Source of the DNA: Saccostrea cucullata
Lineage: Eukaryota
NCBI RefSeq assembly: GCF_032062105.1
Contig: NW_026924640.1
Span: 62,001-126,000, forward strand
Reading direction: 5' to 3'
DNA: 64,000 bases
Shown here piece after piece: positions 48,283 through 57,461 of the stretch (the first letter of the stretch is position 1; each line of letters opens with the position of its first letter). The notes under the pieces are model-generated. The model was given only the letters and a program-made list of their open reading frames with translations, was not told the origin of the DNA and made no database searches. Made by a program: the position numbers and the translations under genes.

Positions 48283-48284
<2 letters not shown>

Positions 48285-49120
48285 AAAATGAAAAGAATTG
48301 GCACAGTGTCCGGTAAATAATGTTAGAAAAAAATGACAAGGCAACAATGTTAGTAAAACGTTAATGTGAGGATTTCTTTCCTATGTAAGTTGTCCCATTT
48401 TTTCTGACTAAGTTTCCATAAGGATTGAAAGACTTCCTGGGTCCCTGTCCAGGATGTCTGTTTCTTAATGCTTGTTTTTCTGTTGAATATCCTCCCTGAG
48501 GTTGTTGGAATTTGTTCTTGTTATACATCATTGTCGAATGATTATCATTTCCCCGATGCAGCATCTTCCCTGTTTTTCTCCCATTCTTTGAAGCAGGGAT
48601 TTGAAACGAATTTCTGTTAATTTGCTGAGATGTTTCCTTGTAACTAGATGTATTTTTTGGTCTACTGGCTGCTTCAGCATAGCTCAGTTCCTGTTGTCTT
48701 GAGTTTACAACAAAAAAGAAGAGGGAGAAAACAGTTCCAGCAACTAACTCAAGCCAACAGGAATTGAGCTATGCTGAAGCAGCCAGTAGACCAAAAAATA
48801 CATCTAGTTACAAGGAAACATCTCAGCAAATTAACAGAAATTCGTTTCAAATCCCTGCTTCAAAGAATGGGAGAAAAACAGGGAAGATGCTGCATCGGGG
48901 AAATGATAATCATTCGACAATGATGTATAACAAGAACAAATTCCAACAACCTCAGGGAGGATATTCAACAGAAAAACAAGCATTAAGAAACAGACATCCT
49001 GGACAGGGACCCAGGAAGTCTTTCAATCCTTATGGAAACTTAGTCAGAAAAAATGGGACAACTTACATAGGAAAGAAATCCTCACATTAACGTTTTACTA
49101 ACATTGTTGCCTTGTCATTT

Positions 49121-49128
<8 letters not shown>
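48283..49128. mobile_element. Palindromic RT-less insertion between (TA)n tracts (putative PLE-mobilised non-autonomous element)
   Basis: Inverted arms 48323-48705 and 48746-49128, nearly identical, each with the same ORF 3' end (SYAEAA...KKSSH*); a 40-nt tail on the left arm only. Confidence 0.7.

Positions 49129-49209
<81 letters not shown>
49128..49209. repeat. (TA)n microsatellite
   Basis: Direct. Confidence 0.98.
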
Positions 49210-49213
<4 letters not shown>

Positions 49214-49287
49214 AGTCCATGAATTCACAGTGGTCGGTATAGTAGTAAAGTAAAAAATAATTAAAAAGAAAACACGAAGACAACAAA

Positions 49288-54898: not shown

Positions 54899-55087
54899 AT
54901 TGTCCCTGTTGGCGTAAATTTTAATCCCCTGAATAATATTTCTTTTTCGATATTATTTAAATCTCTGCTTGAGAGATTAATAATTTTGGGACCTGTTGAT
55001 TTATTATTTAATGACTCTTGAAACGGAAAGTTGCTTGTTTTTTCCGTGTTCTTTGAGGTTGGCGTGGTCCTAAAATCGAAATCATAA

Positions 55088-56747
55088 AATTGAAATCCAG
55101 TAATTTCTACGGATTACCAAAAGTCCACAAATCTAAGGAGATCCAGGAAGCTGTAAAAAATTGTGATGACGCATATATAAAAATATCCCAACCTGCTGAC
55201 CTTAAAATACGTCCGATCATCGCTGGACCTGCATCAAGCACCCAACGACTGAGTAATTTATTGGACATTTTATTGAAACCACTATGCAAATTATTACCCA
55301 GCTTCGTAAGAGATGATATGGATTTTCTGAATTATATTCCCCAAAATGTAGACCCAAACACTATTCTCGTCAGTTTTGATGTTACAAGTTTGTACACAAA
55401 TATCCCACATACTTTGGGACTGGAAGCAGTTAGTTACTGGATAGACAAACATCCGGATATTATAAATGAACGATTCCCAAAGGAATTCATTTTAGAAGGA
55501 CTGAAGATAGTGTTGGAAAATAACCATTTCCATTTTAACAATGAGTTCTACCTACAAATAAAAGGAACCGCCATGGGAACAAAAGTTGCTCCCTCATACG
55601 CAACTTTAGTGATGGGATATTTAGAAGATCAACTATATGGAAAAATACCTGAACTGTTTGATGTCGACTTTGCTAACTACATAAAAAATAATTGGAAACG
55701 TTACCTAGACGACTGCTTCATATTTTGGACCAGGAGTGAAGAAGACTTAACTAAATTCCATTCACTTCTAAATAACCTCCATGATTCCATACAATTTACT
55801 ATAGAAAAAAGTCGTACGGAACTTCCATTTTTAGATCTTCTTATTAGAAAGAATGGATCGTGTATAACTACAGACTTGTACTGTAAACCCACGGACACGC
55901 ACCAATATTTGGATTTTAGATCGTGCCACCCATCCCACACAAAACGTAATATTCCGTTTAATTTAGCACGGAGAATTTGTACAATTATTACAGATGAAAC
56001 CCTACGATGTAGACGTTTGGAAGAATTAAAACTATATTTAAGACGACAAAATTATCCATTGGATCTAATAAACATTGGAATAGAAAAGGCATCCGAAATT
56101 CCAATAGAGGACCTAAGAAATCCACGCCATATAGACGACACCGATGATGACGGGAAAATAGCCTTTGTAGTTACCCATAACCCAAGGAACAGAAACATCC
56201 TTATGGACGCTAAAAGATTTTATCCCATTTTAGAACAATCGGAAAACATGAAAAGTTTAGTTCAGCCAAATGATATCATAACAGTCGACGACAAGCACCA
56301 AGTCTTAAAAAACTGTTGACCAAGGCCCGTTTTACAACACAGGAGGAAATTCCAACCATTAAAAAATGCGGAGATCCGAGATGCGGAACATGTACATATT
56401 TAGAAGAGGGGAATAAAATCCAACTTAAATCAGGAATGGAAATTCGAACCAACTCATCTATGAACTGTAAATCGGAAAACGTCATCTACTGTGCCATCTG
56501 TCCGACGTGTAAAGAATATTATATTGGACAAACGGGAAAATTAAATGCCAGGGTTCGTGTGCACAAGCAACAAATTAAAGACCCTAGTGTGCGTAATACA
56601 CCGTGTTGTGAACATTTCGCAAAATGTGGCAAAGGAATATTTAAGATTTTCCCTTTTTATAAACTTCCAAATGAAAACGAAAATTTACGTTTGGCAAAAG
56701 AAGACTATTTTATCAACCTCTTTAAACCCAAACTTAATCGCAAATGA
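55088..56747 (+). pseudogene. 5'-truncated, frameshifted copy of the family B RT-EN ORF
   Basis: Same protein as 52763-54898; a 1-nt deletion near 56280 splits it into ORFs 55090-56319 and 56316-56747. Confidence 0.9.
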
Positions 56748-56914
56748 TACTGTATATTTTATATTTTGAAATTTCATTTGTATAATGTGTGAAAGTTAGT
56801 GCAAGATTTGTACATTAACAATTACGCCAACTTAACGCTACCTACATCTATTATGACGTCACAATGAACTTTATGCTTTTGACGTTACCAGGTAACCTAC
56901 CTGACATTTGTATA

Positions 56915-56953
56915 ACTGCCTGAAGAGCCGAACATGGCGAAAGCGCTTGCAGT
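56915..56953 (+). ncRNA. Minimal type I hammerhead ribozyme (family B)
   Basis: ACTGC-CTGAAGA-GCC-GAACAT-GGC-GAAA-GCGC-TT-GCAGT: stem I, CUGANGA, stem II, GAAA, palindromic stem III. Confidence 0.82.
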
Positions 56954-57461
56954 AAATGTTTTGTGATATTTTTGGATTTTTACTTTTAAATATACCAAAA
57001 ACTGTACCGATTCTTCATTTTGTTTTGAAATTATATATATATATATATGGGCAGTAACTGCCAAAATATATTTATCATAAATAAATATGCCAAAATATAT
57101 TTATCATAAATAAATATTACCAACGTTTATTGATAAAGATAAAACCATTATAGCCTTCCAATTGTGCAAGTCATCACATTCATCGAAAGTGACTTCAAGG
57201 CGAAAGGGGTAATATTGAATAACTGTCATTTTTTTAGTATTGGAAAATTTCATTACGCTCTAAAGTTCATTTTCTATAAAACAACATCGTTTTTATTTCC
57301 ATTTTACTTTAATATGCACATATATATGATAAAGCCAATCGGTCCATGTCCTCATTGTACCCCTCTGAGTAGGTTCCAACTTCTGATTGACAACTGACTA
57401 CATTTTATTATTTTTATGAAACAAAATTCTTTTATGAAAAAAATTCTATTACAGTCACCAT

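What the first reader, a model, noticed from the sequence alone, without database searches (positions are those of the whole stretch)
48283..57031. Shared 3'-tail motif and arm asymmetry across three different (TA)n-targeted palindromic insertions
Seen: three sequence-distinct elements end next to (TA)n in similar tails. RT-less element: TACC-ggac-ACTGT-gcca-ATTCTTttcatttt (minus, 48283-48315). Family A: TACC-gacc-ACTGT-ga-ATTC (minus, 49210-49240). Family B: TACC-aaaa-ACTGT-accg-ATTCTTcatttt (plus, 56993-57021). In each, the tail is on the more 5'-truncated arm only; the longer arm stops about 40 nt earlier (family A's long arm is disrupted, so it is less clean). Known: PLEs often have inverted pLTRs and a short tail on one repeat. 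Inference: the motif is a conserved cis signal for RT recognition or 3' processing, and insertion uses two priming events, one from each side of a cut in (TA)n, starting at two different template positions.
Basis: partly seen in the sequence, partly recalled or inferred. Interest (0 to 1): 0.85.

Follow-up and report, generated by a model that had tools for sequence, protein, structure and literature searches.

The report
Penelope retrotransposon one-tail rule and hairpin
In an oyster genome, palindromic Penelope-like retrotransposon insertions almost always carry the known ~40-base tail on exactly one arm (either the long or the short one), and the tail's conserved motif looks like half of an RNA hairpin, which suggests that each insertion is made by two coupled reverse-transcription starts at two fixed points on the RNA.

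Summary
The three tails are real. They belong to three Neptune-like Penelope families (RT/EN 40-50% identical) in a rock-oyster genome; the 'RT-less' element is a deleted copy of an autonomous family. A stricter rule holds: 58 of 60 classifiable head-to-head insertions have exactly one tailed arm. The literal motif was seen only in these three families, and family B is probably aligned out of register. What recurs in about 20 families is a C-rich island about 10 nt after the proximal end. In seven internal tandem junctions it pairs with a strand just beyond the distal end (cognate pairing, P about 0.001-0.008; column covariation inconclusive). Both ends sit at UA-rich patches matching (TA)n. 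Best model: two target-primed starts, one per strand, one per site, positioned by this hairpin. Tails, inversions and two start sites are published; the one-tail count, length independence and hairpin were not found in the papers I could search. The scan noted similar Penelope ends elsewhere in this genome. No RNA or biochemical evidence.

The parts
48199..48282 (.). (TA)n target, left of family C insertion
48283..48705 (-). Family C ('RT-less') tailed arm: ORF1 fragment joined by a ~2.5-kb internal deletion to the last 82 nt of the element; hammerhead core missing
48283..48323 (-). Family C tail, 41 nt between proximal and distal ends
48302..48315 (-). Family C type I motif; predicted 5' strand of the hairpin
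48706..49127 (+). Family C tail-less arm, 40 nt longer at the 5' side, same deletion; ORF1 C-terminal fragment 48764-49090
49128..49209 (.). (TA)n between families C and A
49210..49858 (-). Family A tailed arm (649 nt)
49210..49249 (-). Family A tail, 40 nt
49226..49239 (-). Family A type I motif; 5' strand of the hairpin seen complete in L062
49300..49322 (-). Family A minimal hammerhead-like core (CTGAAGA...GAAA)
   Evidence: sequence only; no Rfam hit
49859..51958 (+). Family A long arm, RT/GIY-YIG region with a frameshift; 3' end lost at the junction with another element
52461..52523 (.). (TA)n left of family B insertion
52524..55075 (-). Family B tail-less long arm; RT + GIY-YIG ORF 52763-54898; 5'-truncated at the ORF1/RT overlap
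55076..55087 (.). 12-nt filler at the head-to-head junction
55088..57031 (+). Family B tailed short arm
56920..56945 (+). Family B hammerhead-like core in the pLTR
   Evidence: sequence; no Rfam hit
56990..57031 (+). Family B tail, 42 nt, starting with the ATATA patch of the proximal end
57002..57011 (+). Family B type II motif (CTGTACCGAT); 5' strand of a 10-bp stem seen complete in L027
57032..57048 (.). (TA)n right of family B insertion

Best explanation
These are young insertions of three Neptune-like Penelope elements. The template is a tandem read-through RNA (pLTR, tail, next copy's ORF1). It has two fixed reverse-transcription start sites 30-43 nt apart, each at a UA-rich patch. The tail between them carries a C-rich island that pairs with a strand about 5-20 nt beyond the distal site, forming a hairpin: the distal site lies in its loop and the proximal site about 10 nt before its base. 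The 3' strand is never copied to an insertion's end, so only half the signal is visible there. Inferred mechanism: an RT/GIY-YIG complex, probably a dimer, nicks both strands of a TA-rich target with a stagger. Each 3' end pairs with one UA patch and primes a cDNA, one from each site. The two cDNAs stop at independent points and are joined head to head. Shown here: two fixed ends, the one-tail rule, length independence, TA-like patches, strand complementarity. Inferred: that the hairpin forms and positions the RT, dimer asymmetry, primer pairing, and whether one or two RNA molecules are copied.
For: One tailed end in 58 of 60 classifiable insertions, 37 of 39 in the three searches blind to tail state (one search gives P=1.6e-15 for 59 of 61). 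Same in S. echinata, Mytilus edulis and L167. Either arm can be longer. TSDs of about 17 and 12 bp at C514 and C7740. Template matches (TA)n for 3-6 nt at the proximal end in 11 of 11 families and at the distal end in A (6 nt), B (3), M (4) and C (6). C content is 0.32 at tail positions 10-21 against 0.11 and 0.13 either side. Cognate 5'/3' strands pair best: 6 of 5040 permutations as good, 1 of 120 for five independent families. Held-out L174 forms the stem. A relaxed prediction for family C found CAGTG 12 nt after the distal end at two family-C loci, against 11 nt in A. The window's family C copy moved with only 82 nt of 3' end and no hammerhead core. Published: two internal starts bounding the tail, a stem-loop at the distal start, extension of both strands and a predicted dimer in Poseidon_Ac (PMC11167929).
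Against: Folding z-scores are modest, -0.25 to -2.64. Column covariation on an automatic alignment is not significant. The strict prediction for family C failed, and the relaxed one has as many control matches as real ones, 2 and 2. Windows for the duplex test were chosen after seeing the folds, and the distal site is inferred, not observed, for N, L071, L114 and L174. L174's stem starts later than I predicted. In Poseidon_Ac both strands used the same start sites in vitro and the start site was not homologous to the target. Exceptions: C7327 has two tail-less arms (they differ by 11%) and C22364 may have two tails.
Confidence: 0.62

Rival explanations
1. The two coupled starts are real, but the hairpin has another job, such as controlling translation of ORF1 (the start codon lies in or just after the 3' strand) or marking the internal promoter at DNA level; the start sites are set by the UA patches or by protein footprint.
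For: An ATG lies in or right after the 3' strand in A, B, N and L174. pLTRs are reported to hold promoters (PMC3846280).
Against: Fixed spacing of the island to the proximal end (C at positions 10-14 in 11 of 11 families) and the distal end lying in the loop, as in Poseidon_Ac.
Confidence: 0.2
2. One start site only, at the distal end; the tail is removed from one arm afterwards by endonuclease cleavage or resolution of the intermediate at the proximal TA-like patch.
For: Proposed for PLE tails in PMC8557442. The D. virilis tail was needed for endonuclease recognition (cited in PMC11167929). It also predicts exactly one tail and no length link, and the proximal patch resembles the TA target.
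Against: Two start sites bounding the tail were mapped directly in vitro for Poseidon_Ac. Genomic data here cannot separate the two.
Confidence: 0.12
3. Fold-back or self-priming: one cDNA is made, snaps back and is copied to give the inverted arm (self-priming was proposed in PMC3846280).
For: Arms of one insertion share non-consensus variants and the window's family C arms share a deletion not found elsewhere.
Against: Copy-back of a tailed cDNA requires the tailed arm to reach at least as far 5' as the other; 15 insertions show the opposite, by up to kilobases.
Confidence: 0.04
4. One reading: the tail marks the more truncated arm, and one literal motif is shared.
For: True in two, perhaps three, window insertions.
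Against: 19 counter-examples in G000 and two in other bivalves; the literal motif is absent from most families.
Confidence: 0.02

Closest known systems
Neptune-clade Penelope-like elements (Arkhipova 2006, as described in PMC8557442)
   Same: RT with DKG motif, CX4CxxC linker, C-terminal GIY-YIG with CCHH, hammerhead-like core in the pLTR, (TA)n target, partial tandems, inverted 5'-truncated copy, tail often at one end only, ORF1 separated by a frameshift (listed as a PLE option in that paper's Fig. 1).
   Different: No count of tails per insertion, no test against arm length and no tail hairpin in the passages read. Placement against reference Neptune and Nematis sequences was not run.
Poseidon_Ac of Anolis carolinensis (Frangieh 2024, PMC11167929)
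   Same: Two internal RT starts bound a ~34-nt tail; the distal start is in a stem-loop; both strands are cut and extended; the hammerhead is dispensable; RNA beyond the distal start is required.
   Different: Different clade, single ORF, tail inside the ORF, AC-rich loop not homologous to the target, no strand difference in start site in vitro. Here the tail is non-coding, both sites match (TA)n and the two strands use different sites.
L1 twin priming (from my own knowledge, not tested here)
   Same: Both target strands prime cDNA and give an inversion.
   Different: In L1 the two cDNAs copy different parts of the RNA; here both copy the same 3' region from two sites about 40 nt apart, giving a palindrome.

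Membership tests
EN+ Penelope-like elements | RT followed by C-terminal GIY-YIG endonuclease | tested here: met
   Family B RVT_1 7e-09 and GIY-YIG 8.9e-07; family A GIY-YIG 3.4e-06; family C EN region in L013 and L055
EN+ Penelope-like elements | pLTRs from partial tandems and inverted 5'-truncated copies | tested here: met
   Tandem period about 3.77 kb at C13564; inverted arms
EN+ Penelope-like elements | 30-40 nt tail at one end | tested here: met
   30-43 nt in 11 families
EN+ Penelope-like elements | Hammerhead ribozyme in the pLTR | tested here: inconclusive
   CTGAnGA...GAAA cores present by pattern; no Rfam hammerhead hit at E<=1; cleavage not testable
Neptune clade | DKG motif, CX2-5CxxC linker and CCHH motif | tested here: met
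   D93 K94 G95; C585 C590 C593; C629 C632 H650 H667 invariant in 43 relatives. Nematis shares the linker
Neptune clade | (TA)n targeting | tested here: met
Neptune clade | RT phylogeny with reference Neptune versus Nematis members | not tested
Poseidon_Ac-type internal initiation | Two RT start sites that bound the tail, shown biochemically | not testable with these tools
   Only the genomic signature (two fixed ends) was shown
Poseidon_Ac-type internal initiation | Distal start inside a stem-loop | tested here: inconclusive
   Predicted stems in 7 junctions, cognate-pair test significant, column covariation not
Poseidon_Ac-type internal initiation | [quoted passage not shown] | tested here: not met
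   3-6 nt match to (TA)n at both ends

The most novel reading that the evidence does not exclude
A dimeric Penelope RT grips one RNA at a conserved hairpin and loads the two nicked target strands onto two primer-binding UA patches of that same molecule, so that two polymerases copy one RNA in tandem, the trailing one displacing the leader's cDNA. This would be an obligatory, RNA-structure-programmed twin priming with short telomerase-like primer alignment patches, and the general origin of PLE palindromes and tails.
Probability: 0.3. Interest if true: 0.8.

Novelty: new variant of a known kind. Interest (0 to 1): 0.55.

Why it matters
How Penelope-like elements make their inverted repeats and one-sided tails is stated as open in PMC8557442, and the only in vitro study saw no strand difference in start site. 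A near-absolute one-tail rule with no link to arm length argues against fold-back and against independent choice of start site, and points to a coupled, asymmetric reaction. The hairpin and the two UA patches give exact residues to change in the existing in vitro assay, on a family with near-identical young copies and an open RT frame. The elements themselves are ordinary.

Tried and rejected
Tail-on-shorter-arm rule: rejected (15 against 19). Fold-back: rejected as the general route. My own first idea, a 2-4 bp mini-hairpin wholly inside the tail: 6 of 8 training families (P about 0.002, post hoc) but only 2 of 3 held-out (P about 0.11); replaced by the longer hairpin. Perfect-complement prediction for family C: no match. 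Literal or near-literal motif in 86 distant metagenome and MAG loci: not found at tails. Rfam: only spurious hits. Viral contigs: no relatives. Microhomology between the two arms: exact-match extension was confounded by copy-specific changes (overlaps 0-4 nt in nine cases, apparent fillers in the rest), so no claim is made. In the tree row E is really family C's endonuclease lying upstream of a TA run, so it is not an independent row. Later genome work used the loci already held and short pattern searches, whose printed matches (up to 55 nt) I read, including the two family C junctions. The Poseidon_Ac sequence has no reference here and was only read by eye.

Full report
OBSERVATION. The three motifs are present as written, each 10-20 nt inside a (TA)n run. 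The window holds three head-to-head palindromic insertions: arms 48320-48705/48746-49131, 49508-49858/51386-51736 and 52516-54423/55088-56994. Family B encodes RT plus GIY-YIG and family A a GIY-YIG. Family B's protein is 98% identical to a Saccostrea cucullata protein, so the host is a rock oyster. DKG, CX4CxxC and CCHH motifs are invariant in 43 relatives, which fits Neptune-like Penelope elements. RT/EN identity to B is 49-50% for A and 41-44% for C. The 'RT-less' element is a deleted copy of an autonomous family C: its two halves lie about 2.5 kb apart at C10938, C17397, C11903, C13531 and C13781. The deletion removes RT, EN and the hammerhead core, is in both arms, and was found only here.

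ARM ASYMMETRY. In the window the tail is on the more truncated arm for B and C; A's long arm has lost its end. I mapped 70 loci to family references and ran three pattern searches that catch tailed and tail-less ends alike. The tailed arm is shorter in 15 insertions, longer in 19, tied in 2 (P=0.61; five of the 34 have the partner's 3' end unseen, and the loci are biased against tailed arms under about 220 nt). It is also the longer arm in S. echinata and M. edulis. A different rule is strong. Among head-to-head insertions with both outer ends classed, exactly one end is tailed in 27 of family B, 13 of A and 18 of C. One has none (C7327, whose arms differ by 11%), one may have two (C22364), one is ambiguous (C2365). 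In the blind searches alone it is 37 of 39. Independent choice would give at most 50% (P=1.6e-15 for 59 of 61). Apparent double tails at C9407, C14794 and C18169 are internal tandem pLTRs. Two insertions outside microsatellites have direct repeats of about 17 and 12 bp, both starting with TATA, consistent with staggered nicks.

THE MOTIF. The literal pattern has 322 matches against 163 control; followed by (TA)n it appears only in A, B and C in the listed third of the genome. The neighbourhood loci gave at least nine more families, each with a hammerhead-like core and, where both ends are seen, two fixed ends 33-43 nt apart. Their tails fall into type I (CC-GAYC-ACTG-like: A, C, D, E, J, K) and type II (CTGTACC or CCTATACC: B, F, G, H, I, L, M, N). 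An endonuclease-region tree separates the types (support 90/96; row E is not independent). So B's TACC, at tail position 4, is out of register with A's and C's at 9-11, and its relative M lacks it. What is shared is a C-rich island starting at position 10-14 (C 0.32 against 0.11 and 0.13), also in S. echinata, M. edulis, Solemya and L167. The template matches (TA)n for 3-6 nt right after the proximal end in 11 of 11 families and after the distal end in A, B, M and C.

THE HAIRPIN. Folding internal tandem junctions, where the tail runs on into ORF1, shows the island pairing with a strand just past the distal end: a 10-bp stem in B (L027), CGACCACTG with CAGTGATCG in A (L062), TATACCA with TGGTATA in N, and CTTG-GA-CCGG with CCGG-GA-CAAG in L071 and L114. 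The distal end lies in the AU-rich loop. Each family's 5' strand pairs best with its own or a near relative's 3' strand: 6 of 5040 permutations score as well, and 1 of 120 for five independent families. L174, fetched after the prediction was written down, forms the stem, though about 10 nt later than predicted. For family C a perfect complement was absent; the relaxed prediction found CAGTG 12 nt after the distal end at two family-C loci, one of them already classed as internal, but the control pattern also had two matches. Limits: z-scores -0.25 to -2.64, no significant column covariation, windows chosen after the first folds, seven junctions only.

MECHANISM. Shown: two fixed ends, one of each per insertion, independent 5' truncation, TA-like patches, complementary strands. 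Inferred: a tandem RNA is held at the hairpin by an RT/EN complex; both target strands are nicked; each 3' end pairs with one UA patch; two cDNAs grow inward from the flanks, stop independently and are joined head to head. This geometry gives the observed orientation and a duplication of the staggered target. Arms share non-consensus variants and the family C deletion, which fits one RNA molecule but also two transcripts of one source locus or gene conversion. Fold-back needs the tailed arm to be the longer and fails in 15 cases. Trimming of one tail after a single type of start cannot be excluded from genomic data.

COMPARISON WITH WHAT IS KNOWN. A tail on one of the inverted pLTRs is described in PMC3846280 and PMC8557442. 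PMC11167929 maps two internal RT starts to the tail boundaries, places the distal one in an AC-rich stem-loop, shows extension of both strands, predicts a dimer and finds the hammerhead dispensable; by eye its consensus has a short stem closing just after the distal start. It reports no strand difference in start site and no homology to the target, which differs from this clade. I found no paper giving the one-tail count, the length independence or this hairpin, but the library lacks most subscription papers, including Evgen'ev and Arkhipova 2005 and Arkhipova 2006. Earlier scan notes mention Penelope ends along (TA)n and structured 3' tails on other pieces of this genome; I did not see their sequences.

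VERDICT. It works like Poseidon_Ac internal initiation, with target-matching patches and strict coupling as the variant. Interest 0.55.

Noticed in passing
L027:2903-2909 (window long arm of family B starts here, 55075); L157, L158, L161, L163, L164, L168, L174, L151, L071, L072, L076: ORF1 (404 aa in family B) overlaps the RT frame in the -1 frame with an in-frame T TTT TTN slippery site in all 12 loci with an intact overlap: a likely -1 programmed frameshift. Frameshifted ORF1 is listed as a PLE option in PMC8557442 Fig. 1.
   Followed up: partly
window 51959-52220: A different small palindromic element ending in GTGCTT before TA-like sequence replaces the 3' end of family A's long arm; similar ends occur in L037 and L043.
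   Followed up: no
window 52230-52460: SINE-like unit with a tRNA-like B-box, ending in GTGCTTT at (TA)n; copies in L037, L043, L049. ARAGORN does not call it. Probably the tRNA-headed element of earlier scan notes; not checked.
   Followed up: no
L037:2300-2370, L067:2720-2802, L001, L040, L070: Another hammerhead-bearing TA-targeting family has two ends about 85 nt apart, both at TTTTAGTGCTT, without the C-rich island. The shared GTGCTT end suggests it may mobilise the SINE and the small palindrome.
   Followed up: no
L167:19515-20265: Palindromic array of ~114-nt hammerhead-containing units with no ORF.
   Followed up: no
window 4956-7778 (-): 940-aa ORF with Transposase_21 (CACTA-like) domain.
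   Followed up: no
window 2194-2697 and 18201-18958: Related 22-bp satellite arrays in opposite orientation 15.7 kb apart; also 109-bp (4139-4863) and 171-bp (62067-63206) arrays.
   Followed up: no
window 15437-15509 (+): tRNA-Val(CAC) called by ARAGORN.
   Followed up: no
L151-L156, L168; P0022, P0023, P0063, P0090: Penelope-like elements sit in bacterial MAG and symbiont assemblies, almost certainly host-animal contamination.
   Followed up: no
G000 C13417/C7402, C14794/C9407, C5772: Identical breakpoints on different contigs or twice on one contig: haplotigs or segmental duplicates, counted once.
   Followed up: yes
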